The notes under the pieces are model-generated. The model made no database searches. It saw only the letters and a program-made list of their open reading frames with translations, and was not told the DNA's origin. 64,000 nucleotides of DNA from Selaginella moellendorffii (taxonomy: Eukaryota > Plantae > Lycopodiophyta). Position numbers and translations under genes: made by a program. Position 1 is the first letter of the stretch. Each line of letters begins with the position of its first letter. Positions 9,521 to 58,985 of this stretch are shown piece after piece. The stretch covers positions 124,001 to 188,000 of the forward strand of contig NW_003314384.1 in the NCBI RefSeq assembly GCF_000143415.4. The letters are read 5' to 3'.

Positions 9521-11857
9521 ATGTTGATCATGGTGGCCGCGAATTCTTGCTGGAATCTAGCACTCGCAGCGACGTCCTCGATCTTCCAGTATCATAGCAG
9601 CGACGCTGACGATGGAAGAATCCACACAGTGGTCCGGCGATCCAGGAACAAGATGACCAAGAAACGCGAGCTCCTCCAGCGCAAGGGGCGAATCTCCAAG
9701 GAAGAGATTGGCCTGGAGCAGCTGCTGCGGAATCCCGACACCACCACCTACGCGATCCTCCTCCGCCGGTGTGGCCGCGCTCGAGCGCTGGCAGAGGGCA
9801 AGCGCGTCCACGCGCAGATCTTCAAGACTGGCCACGATCGCGAGACGCGGCTGAGGAATCTCTTGATCCAGATGTATGGCGAATGCGGCAGCTTGATCGA
9901 CGCGCGCAAGGTCTTCGATCGCACGCCGGATCCAAACATCTTCTCGTGGAACATCATGCTCGCAGCGTATGCCCACAATGGGCATTCCAACGAGGCGCTG
10001 GTTCTGTCGCAGAGGATGAAGGACAGTGGCGCCACCGTCGTCCCGGATCGAGTGACTTACGTGATCCTCCTCCACGCGTGCTCGAATCTGGGCGCGCTGC
10101 GCGAGGGGCGGATGATCCACGCGAGCGTCATCGCGAGCGGGATGGAATCCAACGTCGTGGTGGCCACCGCAATCGTCAACATGTATGGCAAGTGTGGTAG
10201 CATGGGCGATGCGAAGATGGTCTTCGACAAGATGCCCGCCAAGGACGTGATCTGCTGGAACTCGATGATCTCGGCCTATGCGCTGAATGGATTGGGCAAG
10301 AGCGCGCTGGATCTCTACGCGCGGATGAGGCACAGCTGCGTGAGGCCCGACGCTGGGACGTTCGTGGCGGCGCTGGATGCGTGCTCGGTGCTAAACTCGC
10401 TCGAGGATGGGAAGAAGATCCACGCCGCCATCGCCGCGAGCAAGCTCGAGTGGAATGTGATGGTGGCCACCGCTCTGGTGAGCATGTATGGGAAATGCGG
10501 CTGCCTGGAGCGATCCATCGCGGTGTTTCGCGCGATGGAGGTGAGGAACTTGATCTCCTGGACGGCGATGCTGGGCGCGCTCGCGCACAATGGTCGCGAC
10601 GCCGCGGCGCTGGAGCTCTTCGCCAGGATGCGCGACGAGGGCGTGAGGATCGACGCGGTGGCGATGACAATCGCGCTGGACGCGTGCTCGCGGAGCCGGG
10701 ACTTCACGCGGGGGAGGGAGATCCATGCGATGATCGACGCGGCGGTGGCGGGCAGGAGCTTGCGATCGATCACTCCAGTGCTCGCTGCCGCGATCGTCAA
10801 CATGTATGCGTGCTGCGACGAGATGGATCTCGCGAGAGCGATAGTGGCGAGGCAGCGCGAAGCTCTCCTCTGGAACGCGCTCATCGCGGCCTACACTGCT
10901 CGCGGCCATCCCCGCGAGGGGCTGCGGCTCTACGCGGAGATGATCCTCGCGGAGAGGCGAGGAGCTCCGCCCGTCCGGCCGGATCGAAACACTTTCGCGG
11001 CGGTGCTCGAGGCGTGTGGATCCATTGGAGCCGCGGCGCTGGGCGAGGGGCGGATGATCCACACGCAGGCCATCGCCAGAGCTTGCAACACGGACGCGAT
11101 CGTCGCGTCGGCCTTGATCGCGATGTATTCCAAGTGCGGCAGCTTGGGCGACGCGGTGGCGATCTTCCGGGAGCTCTCGCGGAAGAGGAGCGTGGTGCTG
11201 GTCACCACCATGATCGCGGCTTACGGCCACCATGGAAAGCTCGAGCTCGCGCTGGAGCTCTTCTGGGAGATGGCGCAGCGAGGATTGAAGCCCAACCGGA
11301 TCACTTTCGTCAGCCTTCTCTCGTCTTGCAGTGCCGCAAATTCTCTCCGTGAGGCCGTGTTCTACTTCCAGATCATGATCCACGACTGTGACATCCAGCC
11401 GGGCGCCGAGCACTACCACTTCCTCATCGATCTTCTTGGGCGGTCGGGAAAGGTGGCAGAGGCCGAGGAGCTCATCAACTCGATGCCGTTTGCGCCCGGT
11501 TGCGGCGCTTGGATGAGCTTGCTGGCCGCCTGTGAGAGGCACTCGAAGGTGGAGCTGGGAAGAAGAGCTGCGGATCGAGTTTTCGAGATGGAACCAAAGA
11601 ATGCACTAGCTTACTTGATGCTTGGGAAGATCTACGTCGCAGCCGGGATGTGGGACGAGCTCCTCCAGCTCAAGAAGCTTATGGAGGATAGGGGTCTCAA
11701 GAGGGAGCCGAGTGGTAGTAGTAGTAGTAGTAGTAGTAATAATCCTCCCACCACCACCACCACCACCACAGACTACCACCATTCTTCCTTGCGTGATAAC
11801 GAGAAAGATCCACTGACTTTGAGGCCTCCAGCGTACATTCTTGGACCCCGTCCCTGA
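9521..11857 (+). CDS. PLS-class PPR protein (E domain) with atypical low-complexity C-terminal tail
   Basis: 778-aa ORF with P-L-S triplets and HYHFLIDLLGRSG...AYLMLGKIY...MEDRGLKREP, followed by a poly-Ser/poly-Thr tail. The N-terminus resembles a transit peptide. Confidence 0.93.
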   Translation: MLIMVAANSCWNLALAATSSIFQYHSSDADDGRIHTVVRRSRNKMTKKRELLQRKGRISKEEIGLEQLLRNPDTTTYAILLRRCGRARALAEGKRVHAQIFKTGHDRETRLRNLLIQMYGECGSLIDARKVFDRTPDPNIFSWNIMLAAYAHNGHSNEALVLSQRMKDSGATVVPDRVTYVILLHACSNLGALREGRMIHASVIASGMESNVVVATAIVNMYGKCGSMGDAKMVFDKMPAKDVICWNSMISAYALNGLGKSALDLYARMRHSCVRPDAGTFVAALDACSVLNSLEDGKKIHAAIAASKLEWNVMVATALVSMYGKCGCLERSIAVFRAMEVRNLISWTAMLGALAHNGRDAAALELFARMRDEGVRIDAVAMTIALDACSRSRDFTRGREIHAMIDAAVAGRSLRSITPVLAAAIVNMYACCDEMDLARAIVARQREALLWNALIAAYTARGHPREGLRLYAEMILAERRGAPPVRPDRNTFAAVLEACGSIGAAALGEGRMIHTQAIARACNTDAIVASALIAMYSKCGSLGDAVAIFRELSRKRSVVLVTTMIAAYGHHGKLELALELFWEMAQRGLKPNRITFVSLLSSCSAANSLREAVFYFQIMIHDCDIQPGAEHYHFLIDLLGRSGKVAEAEELINSMPFAPGCGAWMSLLAACERHSKVELGRRAADRVFEMEPKNALAYLMLGKIYVAAGMWDELLQLKKLMEDRGLKREPSGSSSSSSSNNPPTTTTTTTDYHHSSLRDNEKDPLTLRPPAYILGPRP
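11714..11770. repeat. Compound (AGT)n / (CAC)n microsatellite inside the PPR CDS
   Basis: ggtagtagtagtagtagtagtagtaataatcctcccaccaccaccaccaccaccaca encodes GSSSSSSSNNPPTTTTTTT. Confidence 0.9.
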
Positions 11858-14525: not shown

Positions 14526-16711
14526 TCATACCGGTACAGGTTGCGGAGGGGCCTGTGCCGCGACTTCCGCAGCGTAAATCCGGGCCCATCGGTCGGATGT
14601 GAGGATATCATCCAGGCTTGGCTCCTTGACAAAATCTCGCTTGTGCGTTTCGCAAGTCTTCTCGATCAATCTGATGATGTCGAAATAACCAATCCTGGAA
14701 ACACAGCCATGAGAAAAGAATCCTTGGAAACTAACTATTTTGCTTACTTCTCGTCTAGGAAGAGCTCCACTGCTTTCTCGTTGGCCGCGCTCATGACTCC
14801 TGTCATTGTTCCTCCCATTCTTCCAGCTGCGTAGGATATGTCCATGGATGGATACTTTGCTCGGTCGGGGGCTTTGAACGTTAGCGATCCAGTCCTGTTT
14901 CAAAGCTCCGGTGTGACTAAATGTTTCCAACCGACAAGGTGATAAAATGTGAAGCTTACTTGACAAAATCAAGCCTTGGCCAGGTGATTTCTGAGCATGG
15001 AACTCTATCCGGCCAAGAGAGTGTGTAAAGAATAGGTAGTCGCATGTCAGGCCACCCCAATTGCGCCAGGATGGAGGAATCCTGTATTTGACTAGCTGTG
15101 TTAGTTGTGTGTTGAAGCATTCAACTCATATTACCTGTGTCTCGATCATGGAGTGTATAATGGATTGGGGATGGATAACAATGTCAATGTCATCATAGTC
15201 AGCTCCAAACAAATAGTGAGCTTCAATGACCTCGAGTCCCTGCCAGCAGAAGATGTTAGTTCAGCAGACAAGTATAAAAATGTTTTTTTACCTTGTTCAT
15301 CAAGGTTGCCGAATCCACAGTAATTTTCTTTCCCATACTCCAGTTTGGATGCTTCAGCGCATCTGCTGGTTTGACGTCCTTGAGCCTTTCCACTGGCCAG
15401 TCCCTGATTTTTAAAGAGAAGTTCAGTTTGGATTGGTGAAGTATAACGACTGGTCAGTCGATTTTAGTTACCTGAACGCTCCACCAGATGCTGTGAGAAC
15501 AATCCTACGCATTCCGCCCTCTGGAAGCCCCTGAATGCACTGAAATACGCATGGTTGAATGTTAGAAATAAGCACTGTTGGAGGAAAGAAAATACATCAC
15601 CTGGAAAATCGCGGAATGTTCTGAGTCCGCAGGTAGGATGTTGATTCCGTGTTTCTTTGCAAGAGGTAGAACATATGGACCGCCGGCTATGAGAGTTTCC
15701 TTGTTGGCTAGAGCAATATCCTTTCCAGCTGCTATTGCTGCTACTGTAGGCTGCAAAGAATATTATTGTACATGTCTAAGTGCTTGAAGAACAAACTTTC
15801 GTGTACGCTTACCTTGAGGCCAGCACAACCAACGATTCCAGTCACAACTTCTACTGCCTCTGGATGACACGCTATCTGAAGAGCAAAAAAAAGCAAACAC
15901 AAGAGGAAAACATAAGACCAAAAACAAACTGAGAAAATCAAAGTACCTGTACAGTTCCTTCGTCCCCAACGACAATCTCTGGTTTTACGTCAAGATCAGC
16001 AATGGCTTCTTTCAATTCGTCGATTAGCGATGCGTCTCGAATCCCAACCATGCTTGGTTTGAATCTCCTGACCTGTTGATTGGCAGTGTAAGCTCGTATA
16101 AAACAGATACGACCAATTCGTAGTTTACCTGATCAGCAAGAAGTGTAACGTTTGAGCCAGCAGCCAGCCCAACAACTTTGAATCTGTCAGGATTTTCCGA
16201 GACGATGTCAAGTGTCTGGCACAACACCACGTTAGCATCCTCATCGCTTGCATAGGAAACGAAGAAAAACAATTCTAACCTGTGTGCCGATGGAGCCCGT
16301 GGATCCAAGAAGTGAAATGGGCTTTGGTCCATCCCAGGATTTTTTTCTAGCTCCATCCACCATTGCTCTGCCTGGCCAAGCTGAGGGGGGACCATTTGAC
16401 GAGCAGCGTATCTTAGAGGAACCAGCATTTCTTGAGCACTCTTGCGTACTGGAGGAGGTACCACATTGAGCGCCTGCAAACATGCAAAGCTAGAACGAAT
16501 GAGTACTGTCGCTGTCGAAAACGTGTTTCACGCACCTGTTACTGCCAATTTCCTCCCTGTGAAACACGAACTGGAGCTCGAACTCAGCCGCTGCAAATCC
16601 CCCTAGAAAGAAATTTCCACATCCATGAGAAATCCCAGCTCCAGAAAACCTTACATTCGCCGTGCTCCCGATGCGCCCTCCAGCATTGCTAAAAACAGCC
16701 TCCAAAGCCAT
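14526..16711 (-). CDS. DXR: 1-deoxy-D-xylulose-5-phosphate reductoisomerase (MEP pathway), multi-exon
   Basis: [78 protein letters not shown] and [12 protein letters not shown]; transit-peptide-like N-terminus. Confidence 0.97.
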
Positions 16712-17433
16712 CGGCAGCTCCCAGAAATCGCTAGACGCGCGGTCAATCGCTCGAAATATCGCAGCGGCAATGCATGCCTTTGCAACGACAGGCCAAGAGC
16801 CCTAAACTTCCTTATCCCCTGAGCGATTCCTCTGGCTGTGAAGGGGGCCTCGCCAAAGAACTTAATACGTATATATATGCACAGCCTGGAATGCATCGGA
16901 CCGTCCATCTGGTGCCCATTCCATGGTACCAGATGACGCGCAATCCCGCTCTGGACGATCCCAGCCGTGCAAACGTGGATCAAGCGAATCGTGACCGTGG
17001 GCCTAGCGCATGTTGTTTTAGTGAATGCTAGCGTGGTTGAATTGACCATAGTGTGGCGGTGTTGTTATAGTTAACAACCATTCGATTGGGAAATTTTGGT
17101 GGAACAAGTGTGACCTCAAGAATGGTGAGTAGCAATCGAGCAAATGGGTCTCCCAATTTTCTAAGTTTTGTCCATGGGATTGTATACTAATCGAGGACTG
17201 TAACTTAAAGCTACATGTCAACGATTCTCAACTTATTCGTGCCGCGCATGGCGACACACGCGGACATCCGAACAGGAAGATGCTTTTTTTTCCAAGAGAC
17301 GAGATTCGAACCCATGACGTTTGACGTTTGTAATGGCGCCAAAGTTTTTGAATTAGCCCTAAAACCAGGTTAGCGCAAAACCCTAGTTCTTCCTCTCCAC
17401 ACGTTGTTGCTAGGGAATGTGGAGGAGCGATCG

Positions 17434-18834
17434 ATGGCGCTCTCGTCTCCGCCTCCTGCCGCTGCTCGCGTGATCAGACCAGGTGGGAATTTGCTGCAAG
17501 GCGCTCGCTGGAGGAGCTCGATTGATCGACCATTGTTACAAGGAGGTATCACGAGGAGGATTTTCATCGATTTACCCTTGGTAGCCGCCGGATTGCTGCT
17601 GTGTAGGGCTGCTTACGCCGATACAATGGCTCCACATTATAGAGGTAAGAAGATTTGCACTCCAGCGATGAGCAAGGTGTTTATTTTCTCACAGGCCTCG
17701 AGAGGCTGCCTTTCAAAAAGGAAGGATACAACTTCTGGAAATGGAAAACACACCGAATTCATTACGTTGTCGAGGGCCAAGGAGCTCCTGTTCTGCTGGT
17801 GCACGGTTTTGGAGCGTCAGCTTTTCACTGGAGGTAAGCTTCGGAAATATAGATTTTTTCTATGGCATTTGTGAGTTTTGTACTCTCGCAGGTACAACAT
17901 TCCAGAGCTGGCAAAGTATTTCAAAGTGTATGCAATGGACTTGCTGGGATTTGGACTGAGTGACAAAGCTCTTGTTGAGTATGATCCATTTCTGTGGAGA
18001 GAACAAGTAGCCGCTTTTGCTCGGGAAGTTGTCCAAGAGCCTGTGGTGCTTGTGGGAAACAGGTAAGTCCTACTACTTTCTTCTTTCGTTTTCCTGCATG
18101 CCTAGGATCTTAGTTTTCTTGGCATTTTGATACAGCATTGGTGGATTTACAGTGCTTCACACAGCTTCAGTTTATCCTGAACTCGTCTCTGGCGTGGTTC
18201 TTCTAAATTCATCAGGACAGTTTGAAAGTGAACTGAAAGAGAAGAAAGCGAAACCTGTTGTGGAAGAAACAGCACTAAGGAGACTAATCAATCCTATCCA
18301 AGAATGGGGAAGACGATGGTTAGTTTTCCTGACATTCTGGCAAGCCAAACAGCCTTCTCGAATCCGCTCAGTTCTACAAAACGTCTGTTATTCTCGTTTT
18401 CTTTTCTATCCCGAGTACTAAAACTTGCTACCAGGTGTACAAGGACAACGAGAACGTGGATGACTATCTTGTGGAGTCGATCGTTTTACCAACAAAGGAC
18501 CCCAACGCAGCTGAAGTCTACTACAGGTATGCACATAGTCTTCTCGTGAGTGTTAAATGACTCGAGTTTCAGGATGATGTCGAGCTTTATGCTCAGGCCC
18601 TCGACGCTGACCATGGACTCGCTACTATCCAATCTCTCGTGTCCACTTCTACTTTTATGGGGAGTGTTGGATCCCTGGGTTGGTCCTGGAAAAGCAGAGA
18701 AGATCAGAGCCTTCTACAAAGATACTACGGTTGTGACTTTGGAAGCTGGGCATTGTCCACACGACGAAGCCCCGGGAGAGGTGAACAAGGCTCTGGTAGA
18801 GTGGATATCGGCAAAAGTATCGAACAGAGCCTAG
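17434..18834 (+). CDS. Plastid-type alpha/beta hydrolase (pheophytinase-related family)
   Basis: LLVHGFGASAFHWRYNIPELAK, DLLGFGLSDK, nucleophile motif VLVGNSIGG (split by an intron), LLLWGVLDPWV and AGHCPHDE. Confidence 0.92.
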
Positions 18835-19162
18835 TGAGCTTACTAAATTGAATATTTCTTACTTTGGGCCTGTTTTTCTTTCTCGCCAAGTTGCGTTTCG
18901 TGGTAGAGATTTTCTGGCGGTGAAACACGTGAACAGTTCCAAGTTTTCCACGCTCATCTACTTTGCAGTGACGCAAGCTTCTGTCACCCCGCCATTTCGG
19001 CCGCTATGATGGCCGTGGTTCACTCAGTGGAAAATGGAGCACTCTCGAACGCTGTCACGACTCACAAGCACTCTTCGGGCTCCACCACGCACAAGAACAG
19101 AGGTGAACAACTCTTTAAGTTTTTCCTTTAGTTTGATAGCTCTTTCAATCGAGGCTTACATT

Positions 19163-19938
19163 CTACCCTTTGCTGTAAGCAGGTCGTACGTTTGTGTTGC
19201 TGAAGAGGTAGTACGCAGAAATCGCCGCTGAGAATGCGAACAACACCGTCGAAATGAACGAAGTAACCAGCGAAGCTCCGAGCTGGTGACAAAACCGTCC
19301 GAAGAGGGAACAGACTTTGAGCCAGGATGCCTCTGGTGGTGCGTGAGCCCCCATATACGCAACCTCCGTTGATGCCGCAGCGGCTGCTAGGAGAACGTAA
19401 GTTATGAGCTGCAGACAAGAAAACGCTTCAACTCCCAATCTGATTGAAATTCTTTCAACAGGTGTGACCTGATCGAACACGAAGATGAACCATGCTATAG
19501 CCTTGGAGCGCTCGGCAGATATGATCGACAAGACCAACACAAGGAGCGTGTAACCAGCGCCGATTCCTGCCGCAGAGACGAGATATCTGAAAAGAAACCA
19601 GCGAGTAAACACAGTCGATAAGCGAACGAAACATGAGACGAACGTGAAGACTTAAGAAAGAAAGAGAGGAGAAAACCGTGAAAAACTTACACAAACGCCT
19701 TGGCCAAGTCGAAGCTGACCGTCTTGGTGATCGTCAAGTTATTGAAGCCTGGGACCTGAATGGCACTAGTCTGCTTATCCGTGATGAGAACGACCATGGT
19801 GACAGCGCAACACACAAACGCAGCGAAGCGAAGCATCAGATCCGTTCTCTTCAATCCTTTGCAGCCTTTCTGCTCCCCGGCAGAAATTGGAGGAGAGATT
19901 TGCTTGTCAGCAGCGACTGGAATTCGATGCTCGCTCAT
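19163..19938 (-). CDS. CASPL: CASP-like protein (CASPL, 4 TM), 3 exons
   Basis: DLMLRFAAFVCC...DKQT, AFVYLVSAAGIGAGY, FVFDQLITYVLLAAAAA and WLKVCSLFGRFCHQ. Confidence 0.93.
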
Positions 19939-20239
19939 TTTCGCTCTAGCTCTGCTCGACTCAACGCATTGGTAAGCTACTTTGAGTTTAAATACTCGTG
20001 ACTCTCTCAAGCGTGATTACTTTTCCATTGTTTTTTCCTTCCAGGGAAATACATCCATGGTCTTCCTAGTCACAGGTCAATGACAGCTAACGAGAAAGCG
20101 TCGCACGGGCATGAAGCAGATGAGTAGAAAGATTTTCTCCCCTCTTTCTCTCCACTCCTGATACTTTAAAGTAAATTTTTTCACAGGCGTTCTAGAAAAG
20201 CATCCGGCTTTTGCGTTCACACACACACTCGCGAGCGGC

Positions 20240-21766
20240 ATGGTGGTCAACTTGGCGTCCGTAGAGCAATTCAGCCGAGATCTCAAACAGTGCGCCGGTA
20301 CGAAGGACTTGAAACAAGGCCGGAAAATCCACCTTGCAATCCTCAGCAGCCAGCACCGACACAACACTTTCGTCTCCAACCTGCTCGTCCACATGTACTC
20401 GAGCTGCGGCAAGCTCCACGAAGCAATGGCCGTCTTCTCTCGGATCCCGGAGCCCAACATCTTCTCTTGGAACATCATGCTGGCGGCTTTCGTGTGGAGC
20501 GACGAGCTGGGAGAGGCCCGGAAGCTCTTTGACAGAATGCCACACAGGAACGTAGTCTCCTGGACGACGATCTTCCGAGCTTATGCCCAGAGCGGGCATC
20601 TGGACCAAGCCAAACTTATGTTCGATCAAATGCCCGAGTGGGACGTGGTCTCGTGGACGGCGATGGTTCAAGCTTACGCCGAGAATGGAGAGCTTTTGCA
20701 AGCGGAAAATATGTTCTCCCAGCTTTCAGACCGAAATATCGTCGCTACGAACGCTATGATCACGGCTTATGCCCAGAGAGGACAGGTCTCTCAAGCGAAG
20801 AAGCTGTTTGAGGAGATGCCCGAGAGAGATATCTCGTCCTACAACGTCATGATTCTGGCGTACTCGCAACAAGGACTGATGGAAGAATCTCGGCTGGTTT
20901 TTGACTCCATGCCTTGCCGCAACCTCGTCTCGTCGACCACCATGGTGCAAGCGTATGCCCAGAAGGGGTATATCGAAGAAGCCGAGAGGATTTTCAACCG
21001 GATGGTAGAGAGAGACGACGTTTCCTGGACCACCATGCTCCAGGCCTACGCTTCCAACGGCAACATCGAGAGAGCTCAAGAGACGTTCCGAGACATGCCA
21101 AGGCAGGACTTAGTCGCATGGACTGCGATGGTTTGCCTCTACGCACAAAACAGGCACACCAAGGCTGCGAAGTTCGTCTTCGACAGGATGCCGGAGAGAA
21201 ATGCCGTGTCGTGGATCCTGATGATAACAGCTCTCGGCCGAGATGGAAAGGTTGAGCAAGCACGGAAAATGCTCGACACAATGCCTCACTGCACAGTGGC
21301 TTGCTACAACGCCATGATCGGATGCTACGGACAGAATGGTCACGTCGAGGACGCCAGCGAAATTTTTCGACTCATGATCGTGGAGGGTGCCGTGCCCGAC
21401 GAGGCAACGTTCACGAGCGTTCTCGGAGCTTGTAGCCATGGTGGTCTTTTGGAGGATAGTCTCCACCACTTTAGAGCTATGCCGGACCAGCACGGTGTCG
21501 AGCACGTAAGGGAGCACTACTGCTGCGTGGCTGACATCCTGGGAAGAGTTGGGAAGCTAACGGAGGCTCACGAGTTGCTGAATTCGATGCCTCTCAGGCC
21601 TGGAGCTATCGGCTGGACATCCTTCGTTGGAGCTTGCATCACACACTCGGATGGCATTATCTCCGGAGTCGAGGGAGTGGAGAATGTTTTGGAGACGAAT
21701 CACTCCGAAAGTCTGGGGAAGCACTTGCCTTACGTGATGCTGGCGAACGTTTTGAAGAAATATTAA
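20240..21766 (+). CDS. PLS-class PPR protein (E domain, no DYW); may extend 5' via exons 19927-19971 and 20045-20075
   Basis: 508-aa ORF with tandem short PPR motifs and HYCCVADILGRVG...MPLRPGAIGWTSFVGAC. The frame stays open back to a phase-1 AG acceptor at 20186. Confidence 0.92.
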   Translation: MVVNLASVEQFSRDLKQCAGTKDLKQGRKIHLAILSSQHRHNTFVSNLLVHMYSSCGKLHEAMAVFSRIPEPNIFSWNIMLAAFVWSDELGEARKLFDRMPHRNVVSWTTIFRAYAQSGHLDQAKLMFDQMPEWDVVSWTAMVQAYAENGELLQAENMFSQLSDRNIVATNAMITAYAQRGQVSQAKKLFEEMPERDISSYNVMILAYSQQGLMEESRLVFDSMPCRNLVSSTTMVQAYAQKGYIEEAERIFNRMVERDDVSWTTMLQAYASNGNIERAQETFRDMPRQDLVAWTAMVCLYAQNRHTKAAKFVFDRMPERNAVSWILMITALGRDGKVEQARKMLDTMPHCTVACYNAMIGCYGQNGHVEDASEIFRLMIVEGAVPDEATFTSVLGACSHGGLLEDSLHHFRAMPDQHGVEHVREHYCCVADILGRVGKLTEAHELLNSMPLRPGAIGWTSFVGACITHSDGIISGVEGVENVLETNHSESLGKHLPYVMLANVLKKY

Positions 21767-21822
21767 AAGGTACGCTATAGGTAGAAGGGTTTTTGCTTAA
21801 TTCTTTTTGTTCTTTGGCAGGG

Positions 21823-23780
21823 ATGGATGCCGCAGCCCTCTATGCCGGGACGGTTCTTCTTCGTAAGACATTCGAGGCGCTCGCGCAGCGCTCCGTCACG
21901 TCACTCTTCACGCGGCTGCATTCCAGATTCAGTGGGCAGCATCGGGTTCGTGTTTCCTTTTATTTTCATCAATCAATGACAAGTTTATTCCCTACAGATT
22001 GAGCTCTTGCAAAAGGAGCTGGAATCCAGACTTCAGGTACGTTTAGCAAGCTACACTAGCAAGCTAGCAGTTTTTTGGAGCCACCCATCTGATTTAAGTT
22101 GGTTTTTGTGACGCAGGTTCTCAGCCTTCCCGTGGATATGTGTGTGCAATACGTGCTCCATGGAAACACGGTTCTACAGGTCAGTGTTTAATATTCTTTC
22201 ACTGTTTCCAGATGTTTTTCTGATTCATGCAGGGCGCTTTGGACATGATATTGCGTGTGATCAATGACATTGTGAGATTCCAAGAAGAACTTGAATCTCA
22301 AGTTTATAATGAGGTGTGTTTTTTTCTCTACAAGAAAATTGCTGTGACCCAATCTTCCAGGACGTCGTCAAAACCTCTCCATCCGAGGCAGAGAACAGGC
22401 TACAAGGTTTTCTCACAAGGTATTGCCTTTTGAGACTCTTCTTTTGCTTAAAATTGTGGAGCTGCAGACTGGATGCCATCTTGCCGTACATGGCGATGGC
22501 TATGAACGCTGTCTCGTTGCTAAAGTCAGAAGAGGATGGAATTTCTCCAGCACGTTTGATGGACGCCAGCTATTTGGTTGTTTTTTATTTTTATGCTCAC
22601 TCTTTTCTCACTAGCAACGTTTTTTCTCGCAGATTCGGGGTGCTGAAATTGGGAATGCTGTTCTGAGTTTCCGAGTGAAGCTTTATGAATATGAAACTCG
22701 ATTAACGCTCCCTCGCTGGCAAGAAAAAATTCCGCACTGCACTTTGACACTCAGAAAATTGGTGCCTTTACCGGACGCAGAAGCCGAGTTTCTCGTTGAG
22801 ATTGATAATTCGGTTCGTCAATTTCTCAGTTTTCTTTTTTCGTGGTTTTGAGCTATTGTCTGCATTTTCATATCCAGGATGAAGATCACAATGAGAATAA
22901 CCACCAGCATATATCGATACCTCTTTCAAATGTGGCTGCCATTGGTAATCATAAACTTGAGCAGCTGTGTTTGAATAATTTTCTTCTGTTGATATAGGTT
23001 CTTCCACTTTGCATGTTCTTGGGCTTGGACAACATGAGTTAGAGGCCGTCCTTCTCATTGACGTATATGCTACTTCCGGTCTTATTTGCTTTTCAAAAAC
23101 TTGGATTTGGTCTAGCTCTGACCCAGGTCTTTGTGTCCAGATAATTCGCCCGAACCTCTAGAATCTCCAGCAGGGGTGAGAATGAAAGAACTTGATGTGA
23201 AGCTAGTAATTTTCCTGTCAGGATCGACCTCAAGTCACAAGGATTGTTCACTATGCATTGCAATGCATGGATGGGGATGATGGTGGTGACAACGACAGTG
23301 CGTCGTCGAGTACCCAAAGCAGTGAAGCCTTGGGCCTGGAAGATCATGTTGGAGCAAGAACAGCAAAGCTTGGAGTTCTAGAGGTGGGATTATGTTACAT
23401 TTTCCTTTCTTCTTACCCCCTTTCCCTTGCAGTACGTCCTAAGGTTGTGCATTCTCCAAATCCGCGAGGAGAAGGATCATTGGCTCGTCCCAGACGAGCG
23501 GATAAGAATGTTTTTCGCTGATCCCAGGTTTAGTTTGTCTGATGCTTCCTTCTCATAATCCTTGAAGCGCATGCGTCGTCTACACAGATTCAACAGCGAG
23601 CCTGTGAGAAACACATCCAAGCCTCACAGACCACCGGGAAGTGGCAACTTAACGCCCAGAAACTCAACACCTCTGAGCGGGACAAAATCGTTGATAAGAA
23701 CTCCCACGACTCGAGGAAGCCGGAGAACAGTCACGGACATGTTTTACGAGCTCAACCTGGACCACCCCGCTCCTCAGTAA
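21823..23780 (+). CDS. Multi-exon gene resembling the RanGTP-binding protein Yrb30 family (Pfam Ran-binding)
   Basis: Spliced reading: LQKELESRLQVLSLPVDMCVQYVLHGNTVLQGAL...INDIVRF; FLTRLDAILPYMAMAMNAV...GISPARLMDASYL; KLYEY...WQEKI; LEYVLRLCILQIREEKDHWLVPDERIRMFF. These parallel the recalled Yrb30 blocks (SPAIDL..GNTSL, AIPLINLA..VSPSRLLQAS, LEYLIRL..LQ...H..I.D....FL). GT-AG introns keep frame. Confidence 0.7.
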
Positions 23781-25014
23781 ATCGACGTTCTTAAATTTCA
23801 CAAGGAACCAACACTATGTTTTAGAATGACAAAACTAGTTTGTCTACAGCAGGAGGTTTAAGGAGATTGATGATTCCAAAAACCGGACCCATGTCTGGTA
23901 ATTGAAAGCCCAAATATAAGCTCAAGCATCTTCTTACGATAAAGGTGGCAGGGCTGTTACTAAGATTCGTACACTTAAATTTTTTCAGGTGAATAGGGTT
24001 TTGGCGCACCATCACGGAGCGAGATAGTGAGGTGAGCAACATGTTCGTCCGCTGCTTGCCTGCCCACTCCAGGAAGAAGAAGAAGACCACTGAAATTGAG
24101 GATTCAGAGGTGTCGGTGATCGTCAAATTACAAGCTGTGTCCAGGTTTGAAGAGCCTCTTGTTGCTTCGTGACCAGCCAAGCAAGAAGGAAGAAGCAGTG
24201 CTTCCTGGGTGAAAGGGATCCCTGGCTGCCAAGATCAGCCAAGCAAGAAGGAAGGACCACGAGTCGTGGTTACATAATGACGGCAGAAGAAGTCTAGTAT
24301 AATCATGATCGCCCAAGCAACAAGGATGAAGTTCTATGAAAAATCACAGTGCCAATCTAGCAGCAGAATTTTCTAGTGGCAGGAGAAGTGAAGAACATAC
24401 CAAGAGATCCTACTTATGGCACTCATGTCTAGAGACTCAGTTGGTGCAAAAAGTTGTGAAGTTTGCAGAAGTCAAAGAGGGATGTAAGGTGTTTTTAAAT
24501 CCACTTTTATTTGAATTGCAAATCCAACTAACACAGCTAGAAGTGGACTTTGAGATAGATCTTATGTGTGACCTCTACATGCTTCACGAAGCAGTGTTCA
24601 AGAAGAATCGGAACCGAGAGTTTCCCGGACAACAACAGCGGAGTGAGTCCTCGCTGCTTCTGCCTCTGCCGCTGCTAAGCTAATTGCGGATCTGGACCAC
24701 AAGCCATGAGGAAAAGTGTGCTTCCCACCTGACCAAGGTTCGTGACATACTTACACTTTCCTTTACAGTTGGCTAAGAAGCAATAACAGGTAACAGATGT
24801 AGAGAAGAGACCCAAAATACAGACAGGATTTCTTTTGAAGAGGAGCAGCTTCACAAGACAAGAAAGAGAGGTTGAAGGCAATTTTACAAGAATGCTGGGT
24901 GAGCATGAACAAAAACAATGCTGGAGAAACACATGACAGATGTGGTCAAACTTAGATCAAGCCTAGAAATGGACAGGGAATGTCAAGCATGACAACAAGG
25001 GAAGAACACCAACA

Positions 25015-25330
25015 CTAGATAAGCTGCGGACATTTATGAGCACAAAGAAGAAAAGAACTAAGTGGCAAAAGAGCCAAGAAGAAACATGGACGAAGGCTAG
25101 ACATCTATGTAAATGGGGAGAAAAGACACTGTCGAAAGTAGAGTGGGGGAGAAGCTGCGGACATGTATGAGCAAGTCAAGCAAAAAAAAAAAGAAAAACT
25201 GAATGGCAAAAAAACAAAAGCTATGGAGGGACAATTACTGGACAAGCTACAGACATTTATGAGCATGAAGAAGGAAAGAACTGAGTGGCAAAAGAGCCAG
25301 GAAAGGACAAAACATGGACGAATTGTAGAT
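25015..25330 (+). repeat. Three imperfect ~80-bp copies in a decayed region
   Basis: aagctgcggacat(t/g)tatgagca...aact(g/a)a(g/a)tggcaaaa...atgga recurs near 25020, 25152 and 25244. Confidence 0.65.
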
Positions 25331-25787
25331 ATAGACTGCCAGCTAGGATGGTGGATACTCAAAGTTTACTTTGTCACAGTACAAACGAATATTCACCCGT
25401 TCTGCTGTAAGTTCTGAACAAATCATGAAACTCTGTTTTGATCGCATGGAGTCAGTCATAAAAAAAACCAACAAGCTCTCACCTTTCACTCACTGGAAGT
25501 ATGAAAGCAACACTCTTTTTATCTCAACCCTCAAGACAGAGGAAACATTCCAAAGCCAACACCTCGCTTCTAGAAGCAGTCCAGAAAAAAGTGATGGGAC
25601 AAGAGAGAAAGCAAATCGAAGAGAGCTAGAGAACATACGAGGGAGCGACTTGATCTCATTCCCAGTGGCCAAGTCCACCACCGCACCATCGATGTCGATT
25701 GTGTAGCCGCTCCCGAGAACCCAGCACGGTAGTCGCATAACCCCCAACTCGCTTCATCGTGCCCAAGTTGCTGCAAGCGACGAACAC

Positions 25788-26123
25788 GCCCTTAACGGGC
25801 TGTGGCTCGCCCGTTAACTTGATCCAGCTGTTGGTAGCCGTCGGATTGAGTCAGGTTCTCTGTGAGAATTTTACTGTTGTTAACCACATTCTGGAGAACG
25901 TGGCTGACAGCTACCAGGTTCTGGAGAACCCAGCTGCCAGCCGCCAGGTTCTGGAGAATCCTCTCATCCTCTAATAACGCTATTCCACGTGTCCATTAAC
26001 AGTCTTGCCACAGCCCATTAAGGCCGTTCCTGGGCACGGCCTCCCTTGTTCCCTCCAGAACACGCTCGAATGCCCGGCTCGCCCATTCTGGGCGGGAACG
26101 TGCTTGCCCTACCCGGGAACTGC
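25788..26123. mobile_element. Two adjacent small fold-back (MITE-like) insertions in the PPR pseudogene
   Basis: First: ccttaacgggctgtggc (~25790) pairs with gccacagcccattaagg (~26007-26023), with internal ttctggagaa repeats. Second: ggccgttcctggg (~26022) pairs with cccgggaactgcc (~26111-26123). Both are absent from the intact paralog; no TSD is clear. Confidence 0.55.
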
Positions 26124-27281
26124 CTCATCAGAGTTACCTTGTCGGGAACCAGCCCCTAGAGCTCCATTCTGTGGCAAACGCTTTAGATAAAGATGCTACC
26201 ATGGTCGACCAAGTTCTTGAAGAGATTGGTTGCCTCGTCTAGCCTAAACCGTCTTCCAAGTGCTGTAAGTTCGTGAGGGCCGCCCAGTCCGACTGCGTCT
26301 GTCCCAAGATCACCGGAGATGCCGTGGTAAGAGAAAGTTAGGACCATGGTAACCACGTCATGCTGGGCTGCCTTGTTGAAGGTTTGTTTGGCCTTGTCCT
26401 GAGCGTAGGCCATGAGCATGCACTTCGAATGAGGCATCTCATCAAACAACTGCTTCAATTCGATGAGCTTTCCATTCGTGCAACAACTTAGTAACAGGTC
26501 GGTGTAAGCCACGGCACTTCTTCCCAGCATTCTTTCAAAGAGAAGGTTCGCTGTCTCAAAAAGCCCACTTAAGGCATAAGCTTGTACAATAGCATTCCAC
26601 GAGCAGAGATTTCTGTGGGGAGTATTCCTAAAGACAAATGATGCCAAGACTAAGTCTTCCTTTTGTGAGTACGCGCCTATAAGTGTGTTCCAAGCACTGG
26701 AATCTTCGGTGTAAAAGCTCTGTAACATGTGTTTCTCATCTTCTAGATACCCATTTTAAAGGGCATATGCAGAGCCCAAAGAACCCCAAGATTAAGAATC
26801 TATACAAGGCATTCTAGAAAAGATATCTAGAGCTTGTGATAACAAACCGTTGCTACCAAAACTAACAAGCATTATATTGCAAGAGATTAGATTTATTGAA
26901 GGCATCAAAGCAAACATCACTACTGCCTGCTCCATATGCCCATTCTGGGCATGTCCAGCTATCAAAAAAGTCCACGTCAGATCGTTTCTATCGCAGGAGT
27001 GATCGAACAAAGCTTGGGCAGTGTGTTGCTGGCCGACTTGTGAGTTGCCATTTATCACAGCGTTCCATGACACAGTGCTCTTCTCGGGGATGAAATGGAG
27101 CGCTCGCATCGCATGGTTGGGGCAAATCCGGAGACAATAGTAGTGAAGGAGAAGATGCTCCAGCATGGCATTCTCTCGAAACTCTCCCGCGAATCGCCCT
27201 GGGAGGAATCCCATCGATTCCAACAACACAATGTGTGAAGTCCTTGTGTGGCATCCCCTGGAAAAAGAAGACCATGTAGGC

Positions 27282-27872
27282 CATGGTTGGTCCCGGCTGC
27301 GTTTGGCCGAAATCCCGACCGCCGCCAAATGCAGTCGGCCAAACGCGGTTGGACAGCTCTGTTCGGTGATTCCATTCGGCAAAAAAAATGGTGATCGCGC
27401 TAGATTTCTGATGTGATGCGGCTATTGCCATCGCCACTGCATCTCCACTGCTTTGCTGTTCTCCTATTGCTATGGAGAGATTCCACAAATGCCCAGCCTA
27501 GCAAGCCTACATAGAATTTGACGAAGAGGGCTATAGCCTATAGGAGCTGTGTGCGTACCGAGCTCTACAGGGCAACACTCTCCAGCCTCTGCTTTCGATT
27601 GAGCGCAGAGCAACTCACTGAGGCCTCGCAAATCAAATCACCCAGTCCACGACACTTGAAATTTTTGCCCTAAAATGGAAATTCTAATTCTTTGGTTTGG
27701 TTTGGTTTGGTTTAATGCTTTGGTTTGTGGTTTTACTAAAAACAAATTTTTTTTATCAAAAAAATTTTGTGAACCGTTCGGCTGTTCGGCATTTTCACAG
27801 CCGGTCAATAACCACGGTCGGGCGGTCGGGCGGTCGGGCGGTGGACATTCGGAACGGTCAGGACCAACCATG
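27282..27872. mobile_element. Non-autonomous hAT-type element / MITE (591 bp)
   Basis: Perfect 12-bp TIRs CATGGTTGGTCC...GGACCAACCATG. The 8-bp TSD atgtaggc/gtgcaggc derives from gcgcaggc of the intact paralog. Subterminal cggtcggg repeats. Confidence 0.88.
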
Positions 27873-28619
27873 GTGCAGGCTTTGAATTGTGCTGCCTCGG
27901 AGGATGTTGGAGGAGAAGACATTGGGGTTTGGATTTGCAGTGTAGGTGGCCTTGGCATCACCCAAGCTCCCACATTTGCCATATATGTAAGCGATCATGT
28001 TGGAGAGGTACAGGATCTGTGCATGGATCCTCCAAATCTCTGGCCTCGCAGCCCTTGCATGTTGTCCATGTGGACAGTCAGATGAACTCCAAATCTTCCT
28101 TTGGGTGTTGACACTATATTTTATTATCTCCCAATGTTCATAGCTTTGTGGTTATAGTATGCACATTATATTGTTCTATTGTGTAGGGTTATTGGGTTCA
28201 ATTCCCAATCTGCCTCATCTTTTCAAGTCATCCTTTCAAGTAGGGATAGTACAATCCTAGAGTTGCCCTTTAAACATGAACAATGTTTTATAATTTTCCT
28301 TTTTTTAACACTATACAATTTATTAGTGAGAGTGGCTCCCTTTCACAATCACACTAAAGATTAATTGTGTTGAGTTTCTAGGTGTTAAGTTGGATGGATA
28401 TACCATTTTATTATTTTCCTTTTTTTAACACTGTACAATTTACTAAAGATTAACTGTGTTAAGTTGATACTAGATTATAGTAAAGAAGCAAAACCAAACT
28501 TGTAATTAGTGGAATTCATTCTAATAGACTTGTCTTGGAAGTGGCATTGATATTTCTAGTGAATTTGGAGAAGGCACACTTACTGTAAAGGGGTAAAGTG
28601 AACAAAACAACTACTTTGC

Positions 28620-28690
28620 ATCCTCAGTCATCCTGTCCATGCATTGCAATGCATGGTGAATTATTGGTGGATCTTGATTCTTGACAAAAA
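28620..28690 (-). pseudogene. Short inverted fragment of the Yrb30-like gene exon at ~23215-23285
   Basis: catcctgtccatgcattgcaatgcatggtgaa matches the reverse complement of ttcactatgcattgcaatgcatggatggggatg. Confidence 0.55.
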
Positions 28691-29133
28691 AGGACACAAA
28701 GAATTGAAATAGATTTCGAGTGAAAGCTTTTTAAAAGCAAACAAACCAAATATAGCCTAATAGTATGTTGTCAGTCCAAAATGAAAGTTGATAGGAAAAA
28801 GTTATTCATCCATAATTTAGTCTCTCTAAGCCTAATACTTGATTTAGAGTTTAAAGTAATATTTGTTTCATCCAATGAGTTTGCCTAATGTTCAATTCCT
28901 TCTGTGTGAAAAAATATATGAGTGGTTTGTGATCTGTCAACACCATGAACACTACATCATAAAAGTAGTGCTACCACATCCATAAAGCATGAACAATAGA
29001 AAATAACTCTTGGTCATATGTGGAATAGTGTTGCTCCGAGGGATTCAAAGTTTGACTCTCATATGCAATAGGCTGTCCCTCTTGCATGAGAACTCCTCCC
29101 AATGCATAATTACTTGTATCATATGTCACTTTA

Positions 29134-30300
29134 TGTAGCGCATGTGGTTTTGACCCTTTATCCTATGGTGATTTACCATAGGATAACACCACGAAGCGGA
29201 ACATAAACCCTCTTTGTGCCACGTGATAGATGCCACGTGTCACATACCATGTGTTCATGCCATGTGTCCATAGGAACCCGAGGTTCAAGGCCTTGGGCCA
29301 CTGAACGAAGGAACGGTGCCAAACTCCCAAGTGTGATGCCAAGGAGTGATGGAACCGGACCACGGAGCAACTCCCGAGCATATAGCCCAAGGAGTGAAGG
29401 GACAGGAGCCCGGAGCGACTTGGAACAGTCCTGGAGCAACCAGCATCCCAATGCCAGGACCAACACGCAAAACGGAGCCAAACGGAGTCTGGTGCTATTT
29501 CGGCATACCGGTGGCCTAACGTGAGGATATGGGTACTCCACCAGCTAGCATGGAATGGAACTTGGGCTTAGACCCAAGTCGGACGCAGAACAAGGATAGA
29601 CACGCAAGCGGGAGCTAGACTATGCCTCAGGTTGGTCGGCCATGTCCGACCTACCCTCTATCCCTACTATACATTTGGAACCCCCCACAACCCCCCCGGC
29701 CCCTTTCCCCCCCCCCCCCCCCCTTGAGGAACACACGCTTTGGGCTTTCACCCCAAGCCTCCCTTAGTATCAGGAGTTAGTCTCTGGGACAAGCTTGAAA
29801 TTTACTAAATATGGAATGTCCCTACATTGTGAATTTGGACATGGGACGAACACCATTGTGTTCAGACCAATCTCTACATTTCGTAGATATGCCAAATGAA
29901 CAAATCTGGACACTTTCCATAAATAGCATTTGGGACCGAAATGAGACTAACACAAAGGGCATGATAGCGAGGGTGTTTGGCAGACACGGTAAGCTATCAT
30001 GTAGCGATATTGAGGGACCAATCTCAATATCGCGGGGGTTCTTGATACTAGCAAGTGCAAGCCAATGACTCAAGTTTCTCAAACCAAGCCGAGTATGCTC
30101 AGCAAGAAACACATAGGGTTCCTACCTTATGTTTATCTAATCTAAGTGCATGGTCATTGACCAGTTTCTCAACTAGCTCAAGTGGGAACTGATAACGGGT
30201 CCAGCAATACCGACCTCTTGCTATCGTGGCAGTAAGGTAAGAGTGTCCATAAGGACTGGCCGACAGGTAACTTTCGATACCCGAAGTCACATTCGCGACA
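29134..30300. mobile_element. Solo LTR (family A), 1167 bp
   Basis: TGTAGC...CGCGACA termini, perfect 5-bp TSD CTTTA on both sides, homologous to the split copy at 37764-46414. Confidence 0.9.
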
Positions 30301-58882: not shown

Positions 58883-58985
58883 TCTTCCTACTAGCCACCT
58901 TTCTCCCCTTGCAGTGTTTCCTTTTTATAAAGAAGGTCCGTTAGGGTTCTTCGTGTCGTATCTAGAATGTAGGGCTTTTGAAGGT

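What the first reader, a model, noticed from the sequence alone, without database searches (positions are those of the whole stretch)
19927..23780. PPR gene behaving as a cassette exon: one leader, two unrelated proteins (PLS-PPR or Yrb30-like)
Seen on the + strand: exon A 19927-19971 (MLAHFRSSSARLNAL, donor GTAAGC), a strong acceptor at 20044, and exon B 20045-20075 ending in phase 1. Exon B joins in frame to the acceptor at 20186 (G|GC GTT..., open into the PPR ATG). It also joins in frame to the acceptor at 21820 (G|GG ATG of the Yrb30-like ORF). A GT donor sits just 3 nt after the PPR stop (intron 21770-21820, 51 nt), leaving no room for a separate promoter. Inference: one transcription unit yields either a PPR-included, effectively dicistronic mRNA or a PPR-skipped mRNA for the second protein. 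This would fit a PPR retrocopy that landed in a host intron and borrowed its promoter and an R/S/L/A-rich presequence-like leader. The exon B donor (GTCAAT) is weak and phase agreement can occur by chance.
Basis: partly seen in the sequence, partly recalled or inferred. Interest (0 to 1): 0.85.

Follow-up and report, generated by a model that had tools for sequence, protein, structure and literature searches.

The report
Spliced two-gene PPR/Ran-binding mRNA in spikemoss

Summary
The window matches Selaginella moellendorffii scaffold GL377688.1 exactly over the 15,118 bases compared.

**Confirmed by RNA**
- The 51-nt intron 21770-21820 starts 3 nt after the PPR stop and ends 2 nt before the next ATG. 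It is spliced in four transcriptome runs from four studies.
- In three of those runs a single contig runs from the PPR leader through the whole PPR ORF into the 13-exon PF05508 (Yrb30-like) gene.
- After splicing, stop and start are 5 nt apart.
- Both haplotypes keep the arrangement. RefSeq forces it into a chimeric protein in each.
- The PPR ORF is under purifying selection (pN/pS about 0.10).
- Orthologues of the second gene in mosses and ferns are stand-alone proteins. No PPR lies upstream in the two loci checked (Sphagnum, Physcomitrium).

**Not confirmed**
- Exon A lies antisense on the 5' end and start codon of a CASP-like gene.
- Acceptor 20186 seems to be used, but the overlap signature fits neither exon A nor exon B as donor.
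- The leader is not conserved as coding sequence, and the second protein's N-terminus needs no leader.
- No PPR-skipping junction was among the 15 of 21 joints the tool displayed.

**Verdict:** a dominant spliced dicistronic mRNA. How the second ORF is translated is unknown.

The parts
19163..19972 (-). CASP-like gene with three exons (19691-19972, 19469-19586, 19163-19408 plus 3' UTR). Its ATG is at 19938-19936.
   Evidence: Pfam CASP_dom. CT..AC joints are present, and contigs of X1 and X3 end at 19972. RefSeq CDS is 203 aa.
19927..19971 (+). No displayed RNA joint uses its donor. Both haplotype differences inside it are non-synonymous.
20045..20075 (+). Donor 20076 is not supported. Haplotype 2 has a 3-nt deletion here.
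20090..20239 (+). Unspliced 5' leader present in contigs of X2 (from 20090) and X4 (from 20121). It holds a 16-codon uORF starting at 20111. Acceptor 20186|20187 inside it is used in X1 and X3.
20240..21766 (+). First cistron: an intronless 508-aa PLS/SS-type PPR ORF without E2 or DYW domains. It is intact in both haplotypes, with pN/pS about 0.10.
21770..21820 (+). 51-nt GT..AG intron between the two ORFs. Its removal leaves UAA-AAGGG-AUG.
   Evidence: The joint is seen in all four runs. Words specific to the unspliced form are absent from most RNA-like runs. The splice sites are conserved in haplotype 2.
21823..23780 (+). Second cistron: a 428-aa RanGTP-binding (PF05508, Yrb30-like) protein in 13 exons. 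Exons: 21823-21945, 21998-22036, 22117-22179, 22233-22313, 22361-22419, 22468-22576, 22633-22812, 22878-22944, 22998-23078, 23141-23175, 23222-23383, 23433-23527, 23588-23780.
   Evidence: The exon model from the RNA joints equals P0002:340-767 exactly. Pfam score is 62 bits.
23781..23926 (+). 3' UTR. Contigs end at 23860-23926. The two haplotypes diverge at 23874.

Best explanation
The stretch is one RNA polymerase II transcription unit of Selaginella moellendorffii. Its main product is a spliced dicistronic mRNA.

**Structure (shown).** Transcription starts in the roughly 120-nt gap shared with the divergent CASP-like gene. It runs through a short leader, the intact 508-codon PPR ORF and the 13-exon Ran-binding-type gene. 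A 51-nt intron begins 3 nt after the PPR stop and ends 2 nt before the next AUG. This intron is removed efficiently, and that brings stop and start to 5 nt apart.

**Translation (inferred).** The PPR is translated as the 5'-proximal cistron. Its AUG has a strong context, and the ORF is under purifying selection. The second ORF cannot be reached by leaky scanning, because 42 AUGs lie upstream of it. It must therefore be made in one of two ways. One is inefficient termination-reinitiation at the 5-nt spacer. The other is translation from minor PPR-less RNAs, produced by exon skipping or intron-retained forms.

**Origin (inferred).** The arrangement arose when a PPR ORF came to lie in the 5' untranslated part of an old stand-alone gene.
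For: - **Splicing and bridging.** Joint 21767>21819 (cut +2, that is intron 21770-21820) appears in X1-X4. Three contigs bridge both ORFs: X2 record 8 (20090-21767 plus 21819-21944), X3 record 13 and X4 record 17 (20121-21767 plus 21819-21944, on to 22811). My arithmetic on the depth bins leaves no coverage of the intron, or of the 21979-22165 bin that spans introns 1-2 (bin 21792-21978 was fitted assuming intron 1 uncovered), in X2-X4. X2 depth is flat along the unit (16.7, 16.2, 17.4).
- **Unspliced form is rare.** Unspliced-specific words from 21755-21835 are held only by X1, X25 and the DNA runs. Fourteen other RNA-like organism-A runs listed hold none.
- **Exon model.** The model built from the joints equals the RefSeq protein part exactly.
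- **Both haplotypes.** Haplotype 2 (GL377665.1) keeps the ORFs, the intron and the splice sites.
- **Selection.** The PPR ORF has 11 synonymous and 4 non-synonymous differences (pN/pS 0.10). The Ran-type CDS has 7 synonymous and 12 non-synonymous (pN/pS 0.52).
- **Scanning barrier.** There are 42 ATGs in the 1682-nt leader, and both start codons have G at -3 and G at +4.
- **Orthologues.** They are stand-alone proteins. No PPR lies upstream in Sphagnum or in Physcomitrium transcripts.
Against: - Only assembled contigs were available. They cannot show transcript starts, ends or strand, and they drop rare isoforms.
- A start site inside the PPR coding region upstream of 21770 would give the same junction.
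- In X1 the contigs break at 21819. The spliced-junction contig there is shallow (7.8, against 26-44 in the flanks), and unspliced words are present. So other RNA forms exist in at least some samples.
- In Arabidopsis read-through transcripts, second ORFs are rarely translated and the RNAs are NMD targets (PMC9768141). A dominant mRNA of this kind would therefore be expected to be unstable.
- An earlier follow-up in this genome (s1-332898) found that other tightly packed PPR pairs are overlapping single-gene messages.
Confidence: 0.62

Rival explanations
1. These are two overlapping single-gene messages. The Ran-binding-type gene has its own start site inside the last part of the PPR coding region, and the 51-nt intron is its own 5'-UTR intron. 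PPR transcripts merely run on into it because the compact genome leaves no room for a terminator. The protein would come from the monocistronic message.
For: - Contigs merge overlapping transcripts, as the caveat states.
- Earlier follow-ups in this genome found this pattern for other tight pairs (s1-332898 and s1-346859).
- It would solve the translation problem.
- In X1 the second gene is deeper than the PPR part (43.9 against 26.5-34.1).
Against: - In X1 the contig over 21508-21762 is shallower (26.5) than the one over 20185-21537 (34.1). No extra RNA enters there.
- X2 depth is flat across both genes.
- No PPR-specific 3' end is visible, because the 51-nt intron and the 21979-22165 bin spanning introns 1-2 are uncovered in X2-X4.
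- A general 3' bias explains the rise in depth toward the 3' end.
Confidence: 0.2
2. A common 5' exon is spliced either to the PPR exon (20187-21769) or directly to 21821. The second choice gives a PPR-less mRNA that makes the second protein. In the reader's version, exons A and B also supply an in-frame presequence to both proteins.
For: - The PPR exon is flanked by an acceptor that seems to be used (contigs of X1 and X3 start at 20185) and a donor that is used.
- In X1 the graph branches at 21819, so more than one upstream sequence enters exon 1 of the second gene.
- CASP-like contigs of two runs end exactly at 19972. A splice branch at the exon A donor would produce that end.
Against: - No skipping joint is among the displayed joints.
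- X2, X3 and X4 contigs pass 21821 without a branch.
- The 2-letter overlap at 20185 fits neither exon A nor exon B.
- Exon A is antisense to the CASP-like start codon.
- The leader carries 3 non-synonymous changes, 1 synonymous change and a codon deletion between haplotypes.
- Orthologues of the second protein begin at the same Met, with no extension.
Confidence: 0.1
3. This is the RefSeq reading. A 92-nt intron inside the PPR ORF (21506-21597) shifts the frame past the PPR stop, so a PPR/Ran-binding fusion protein is made (XP_024521296.1, XP_024519264.1).
For: - Both haplotype models use this intron.
- GTAAGG...CTCAG sites are present.
- The shifted frame stays open for 57 codons.
Against: - Contigs of X2, X3 and X4 are continuous across 21506-21597, and no such joint is displayed.
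- The model discards a conserved in-frame PPR C-terminus.
- Orthologues of the second protein are stand-alone.
Confidence: 0.04

Closest known systems
Arabidopsis polycistronic read-through transcripts with intergenic splicing (Kurihara et al. 2022, PMC9768141)
   Same: Two complete, unrelated same-strand genes sit on one Pol II transcript. An intron spans the space between the first stop and the second start. The first stop is followed by many exon junctions, which are NMD features.
   Different: In Arabidopsis, read-through forms are minor by-products beside monocistronic mRNAs, and NMD suppresses them. Here the joined form looks like the main or only RNA in three of four runs. The intron is only 51 nt, and both haplotypes keep the layout.
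Exclusively polycistronic nuclear loci of green algae (Gallaher et al. 2021, PMC7896298; PMC11291117) and the conserved CDC26/TTM3 bicistron
   Same: One capped mRNA carries two ORFs for unrelated proteins with a short inter-ORF spacer. No separate message is evident.
   Different: The algal and CDC26 first ORFs are short, poor in AUGs and have a weak Kozak context, so leaky scanning works. Here ORF 1 has 508 codons and a strong context, and 42 AUGs precede ORF 2. That mechanism is excluded.
PLS/SS-type pentatricopeptide repeat proteins (At4g02750-like, At2g35030-like)
   Same: Tandem 31-aa PPR motifs, an intronless ORF, and membership of the large Selaginella expansion.
   Different: It ends within the E1-like region and has no E2 or DYW deaminase domain. 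It has almost no N-terminal presequence. Its closest paralogue is about 41% identical.
Yrb30 / Pfam PF05508 RanGTP-binding protein family
   Same: The Pfam hit is above threshold over residues 20-262. It has well-conserved orthologues (about 50-59% identity) in mosses, ferns and another lycophyte, and about 45% in a streptophyte alga.
   Different: The plant members are uncharacterised. Here the gene is the second cistron, and between haplotypes it shows weaker constraint than the PPR.

Membership tests
PPR protein, PLS class | Tandem PPR motifs (PF01535, PF13041) | tested here: met
   PF01535 at 288.6 bits with 10 stretches; PF13041 at 246.6 bits.
PPR-DYW RNA editing factor | C-terminal E2 and DYW deaminase domain (PF14432) | tested here: not met
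   One search shows no PF14432 or PF20431 hit. The ORF ends in ...YVMLANVLKKY.
PF05508 RanGTP-binding (Yrb30-like) | Match to the family profile above the gathering score | tested here: met
   62 bits against a cut-off of 25, residues 20-262 on profile positions 27-299 of 304.
PF05508 RanGTP-binding (Yrb30-like) | Binding of Ran-GTP | not testable with these tools
   This is a biochemical property. No plant member has been characterised, to my knowledge.
Dicistronic / intergenic-spliced read-through mRNA | One RNA molecule links the end of ORF 1 to the start of ORF 2 | tested here: met
   The splice junction 21769|21821 places the PPR stop and the next ATG 5 nt apart within single 31-mers and contigs in four runs.
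Dicistronic / intergenic-spliced read-through mRNA | The same molecule carries the whole of both ORFs | tested here: inconclusive
   Contigs of X2, X3 and X4 span both ORFs, and depth is flat in X2. Contigs are not single molecules, so long reads are needed.
Algal-type leaky-scanning bicistron | Weak ORF 1 start context and AUG depletion upstream of ORF 2 | tested here: not met
   the context is GCGGCAUGG (G at -3, G at +4), and 42 ATGs lie in 1682 nt.
Cassette exon (alternative inclusion or skipping) | Both an inclusion junction and a skipping junction are observed | tested here: inconclusive
   Use of acceptor 20187 is inferred from contig starts in X1 and X3. No skipping joint was displayed, and six joints were not shown.
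Recent PPR retrocopy | A close parental paralogue, and a poly(A) remnant or target-site duplications | tested here: not met
   The best paralogue in the genome is about 41% identical. There is no A-run after the stop. Target-site duplications were not searched.

The most novel reading that the evidence does not exclude
A vascular plant may run a constitutive nuclear dicistronic mRNA in which splicing itself builds the coupling site. Removal of a 51-nt intron sets the stop of a 508-codon PPR ORF 5 nt from the AUG of a conserved Ran-binding-type gene. The second protein would then be made by termination-reinitiation, which would also protect the RNA from NMD. First-stage notes list many other PPR-plus-neighbour pairs in this genome, so this could be one case of a genome-wide way of expressing PPR genes in Selaginella.
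Probability: 0.12. Interest if true: 0.85.

Novelty: new variant of a known kind. Interest (0 to 1): 0.5.

Why it matters
Land-plant nuclear genes are taken to be monocistronic. The known exceptions have a tiny first ORF (CDC26/TTM3) or are minor read-through by-products that NMD removes.

Here a full-length, selectively constrained PPR gene appears to be the first cistron of the main mRNA of an old, conserved gene. Neither leaky scanning nor ordinary reinitiation explains how the second protein is made.

The case also shows that RefSeq turns such loci into false fusion proteins. This affects PPR counts and domain-architecture surveys in Selaginella. It also gives a concrete locus for testing how PPR genes spread by landing in other genes' transcription units.

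Tried and rejected
**Exact-protein look-ups for transcript contigs.**
- Five look-ups found nothing: the 508-aa PPR, the 428-aa second protein, P0121, P0129 and P0126.
- X4's PPR protein should equal the window's, since all its differences are synonymous or lie in the leader. The S. moellendorffii RNA runs are therefore probably not in that index, and I stopped trying.

**Origin of the X3 loose end before 20045.**
- The 30-mer and its 19-mer tail are absent from the window and from haplotype 2.
- Only a 16-nt core matches, at the intron 1/exon 2 boundary of the neighbouring hydrolase gene (17689-17704).
- I considered an allelic deletion, a micro-exon, a minus-strand splice and a paralogous locus. 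None fits cleanly, so it is left unexplained.

**Hydrolase donors as the source of the exon joined to 20187.**
- The donors at 17645 and 17834 both end in GAG and so fit the 2-letter overlap.
- The 719 letters that precede 20185 in X3 record 13 do not match the exon lengths.

**Other checks that gave nothing.**
- A calicivirus-type TGGGA motif in the last 130 nt of the PPR ORF: none found.
- Literature search for dicistronic or read-through transcripts in Selaginella: nothing specific.

Full report
**Identity of the sequence.** Window bases 14663-29780 are identical (0 differences in 15,118) to Selaginella moellendorffii scaffold GL377688.1, positions 138663-153780. The local gene order is:
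- DXR on the minus strand;
- an alpha/beta-hydrolase on the plus strand (17434-18834);
- a CASP-like gene on the minus strand (19163-19938);
- the stretch in question on the plus strand;
- another PPR on the minus strand.

All are correct.
- Exon A (19927-19971) reads MLAHFRSSSARLNAL and has donor GTAAGC.
- The acceptor is at 20044|20045. Exon B is 20045-20075, with the weak donor GTCAAT.
- A second acceptor is at 20186|20187.
- The PPR ORF is 508 aa (20240-21766).
- A GT lies 3 nt after its stop, the intron 21770-21820 is 51 nt, and an ATG follows at 21823.
- Joining exons A and B to 20187 or to 21821 keeps the frame open.

**The two proteins.**
- The first ORF is a PLS/SS-type PPR protein (PF01535 at 288.6 bits) with no E2 or DYW domain.
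- Its best paralogue in the same genome is only about 41% identical.
- The second gene has 13 exons. The model I built from the RNA joints translates exactly to residues 340-767 of RefSeq XP_024521296.1.
- This 428-aa protein matches Pfam PF05508, the RanGTP-binding (Yrb30) family, at 62 bits.
- It has stand-alone orthologues of 428-468 aa in Sphagnum, Ceratodon, Physcomitrium and Ceratopteris. Shorter hits come from Diphasiastrum, Adiantum and a streptophyte alga.
- The full-length orthologues align from the initiator Met onward, MD(VGS)AAALYAG.... ATG 21823 is therefore the ancestral start, and no N-terminal leader is needed.

**RNA evidence.** Twenty public runs hold part of the stretch. 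Thirteen hold about half to two thirds of its words, which is the exonic share, and their contig totals of 25-57 Mb fit transcriptomes. I laid four runs from four studies on 18800-24400.
- Fifteen joints were displayed, and all are canonical. The plus-strand joints cover 11 of the 12 introns of the second gene. The CT..AC joints belong to the CASP-like gene.
- The intron 21770-21820 is spliced in all four runs.
- In X2, X3 and X4 a single contig runs through the PPR ORF, across this junction and on into the second gene. The contigs start at 20090 (X2), 20185 (X3) and 20121 (X4). The X4 contig reaches 22811.
- The depth bins of X2-X4 are reproduced to within a few percent if the 51-nt intron and the introns within bins 21792-22165 have no coverage at all.
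- X2 depth is flat along the unit (16.7, 16.2, 17.4).
- A second index search used only 81 bases whose 31-mers all contain intron letters. X1, X25 and three DNA runs hold them. Fourteen other RNA-like organism-A runs listed hold none. That search sampled only four words.

Taken together, the junction shows at minimum that the last codons and stop of the PPR ORF lie on the same RNA molecules as the start codon of the second gene. No separate 3' end for the PPR, and no separate start inside the intron, is visible in most samples.

**Both haplotypes.**
- The second haplotype (GL377665.1, L010) is 97.8% identical across 17000-23874. It has the same gene order, both ORFs intact and every splice site conserved.
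- Its PPR stop lies one codon earlier (TAT to TAA at 21763).
- Between haplotypes the PPR ORF has 11 synonymous and 4 non-synonymous differences (pN/pS 0.10).
- The second gene has 7 synonymous and 12 non-synonymous differences (pN/pS 0.52). The contrast gives Fisher p=0.045.
- The PPR is thus a constrained coding gene. The second cistron looks less constrained, though the counts are small.

**RefSeq annotation.** RefSeq treats each haplotype locus as one gene with a chimeric protein (767 and 908 aa).
- To do so it introduces a 92-nt frame-shifting intron (21506-21597) that bypasses the PPR stop.
- The contigs of X2, X3 and X4 are continuous across that interval. I therefore regard the fusion as an annotation artefact of a dicistronic transcript.

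**The 5' end.**
- Exon A lies on the opposite strand of the CASP-like gene's start codon (19938-19936) and its 5' UTR. The CASP-like contigs of X1 and X3 end at exactly 19972. That end could be a sharp start site for that gene, or a graph branch at the exon A donor. I cannot tell which.
- X2 and X4 have nothing upstream of 20090 and 20121. This points to a start site in the short gap shared with the CASP-like gene.
- X1 and X3 contigs begin at 20185. The tool reports the leftmost possible cut, which I verified on the 21767/21819 joint. A start at 20185 therefore means the spliced-on exon ends in AG preceded by a letter other than C. Exon B would give 20181 and exon A would give 20186.
- X3 record 13 has 719 letters before 20185 that were not displayed.
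- One X3 contig breaks at the 20044|20045 acceptor. The 30 letters before the break are in neither haplotype locus. A 16-nt core of them matches the neighbouring hydrolase's intron 1/exon 2 boundary.
- X3 also shows a plus-strand GT..AG intron (19103-19182) inside the convergent overlap of the hydrolase and CASP-like 3' ends. Some plus-strand read-through from the hydrolase gene therefore exists.
- The putative coding leader differs between haplotypes by 3 non-synonymous changes, 1 synonymous change and a one-codon deletion in about 43 codons. That is not what a conserved presequence would show, though the contrast with the PPR ORF is not significant (Fisher p=0.12).

**PPR skipping.**
- No 20075>21821 joint, or any other joint into 21821 apart from 21769>21821, was among the displayed joints. 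Six joints were withheld by the tool.
- In X2-X4 the contigs pass 21821 without a branch.
- In X1 the downstream contig starts at 21819, which is a branch point. The spliced-junction contig there is shallow (7.8), and unspliced words are present. X1 therefore holds at least an intron-retained form.
- A skipped form is neither required nor excluded.

**Mechanism.**
- *Shown:* co-transcription and efficient splicing that set UAA and AUG 5 nt apart.
- *Inferred:* the PPR is translated from the cap. Its AUG has G at -3 and G at +4. The unspliced leader carries one 16-codon uORF, which splicing to 20187 removes.
- Leaky scanning to the second AUG is excluded by 42 upstream AUGs in 1682 nt. This contrasts with algal bicistrons, which are AUG-depleted and have a weak first start context (PMC11291117).
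- Reinitiation after long ORFs is known to be poor, and second ORFs of Arabidopsis read-through RNAs are rarely translated (PMC9768141). The only favourable feature here is the 5-nt spacer.
- The PPR stop is followed by 12 further exon junctions. The RNA therefore has classic NMD features, yet it is the main form.
- My best reading is a true dicistronic mRNA whose second cistron is translated weakly, with possible help from minor PPR-less or intron-retained RNAs.

**Comparison and origin.**
- In Sphagnum, the 8 kb upstream of the orthologue holds no PPR.
- Physcomitrium transcript contigs have leaders of about 430-790 nt without a PPR.
- The PPR's position is therefore derived in the Selaginella lineage.
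- A recent retrocopy is not supported.

**Wider context.**
- First-stage notes list several other PPR-plus-neighbour candidates in this genome.
- One follow-up (s1-332898) concluded that four such pairs are just tightly packed genes.
- The present locus differs in having a spliced junction that physically links the two ORFs.
- I also found a second RefSeq PPR/P450 chimera.

Noticed in passing
window 7674-9458 and 9521-11857 (+): Two large intronless PPR ORFs (594 aa, and 778 aa with an E motif) lie only 62 nt apart on the same strand. This is another candidate for co-transcription.
   Followed up: partly
window 57740-58882 and 58863-61781 (+): Two PPR ORFs overlap by 20 nt in different frames. 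This is either one PPR gene broken by a frameshift or two abutting genes.
   Followed up: no
window 19103-19182 (+): In run X3 only, a plus-strand GT..AG intron is spliced inside the convergent 3' overlap of the hydrolase and CASP-like genes. It would remove the CASP-like stop codon region if read on the other strand. This indicates plus-strand read-through antisense to the CASP-like gene.
   Followed up: partly
window 23874 onward; L010 11623: The two haplotypes are collinear at 97.8% identity from 17000 to 23874 and then diverge inside the 3' UTR of the second gene. Contigs of X1 and X3 carry the haplotype-2 continuation.
   Followed up: partly
L011 3001-11053 (scaffold GL377572.1): RefSeq protein P0003 (851 aa) is another chimera. 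PPR repeats fill residues 1-575, followed by the N-terminal half of a cytochrome P450 at residues 592-835. This suggests that read-through splicing from PPR genes into neighbours recurs in this genome.
   Followed up: partly
window 31476-32798 (-): A 440-aa ORF carries DUF659 and the hAT dimerisation domain, so it is a hAT-type transposase gene or remnant.
   Followed up: no
window 21763: Haplotype 2 has TAA instead of TAT at the last PPR codon. Its PPR is one residue shorter and is followed by a tandem stop.
   Followed up: yes
L002-L008: Physcomitrium-like transcript contigs of the orthologue carry leaders of about 430-790 nt, with a 35-codon ORF called in two of them. Several retain an intron that truncates the called protein to 245 aa.
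   Followed up: no
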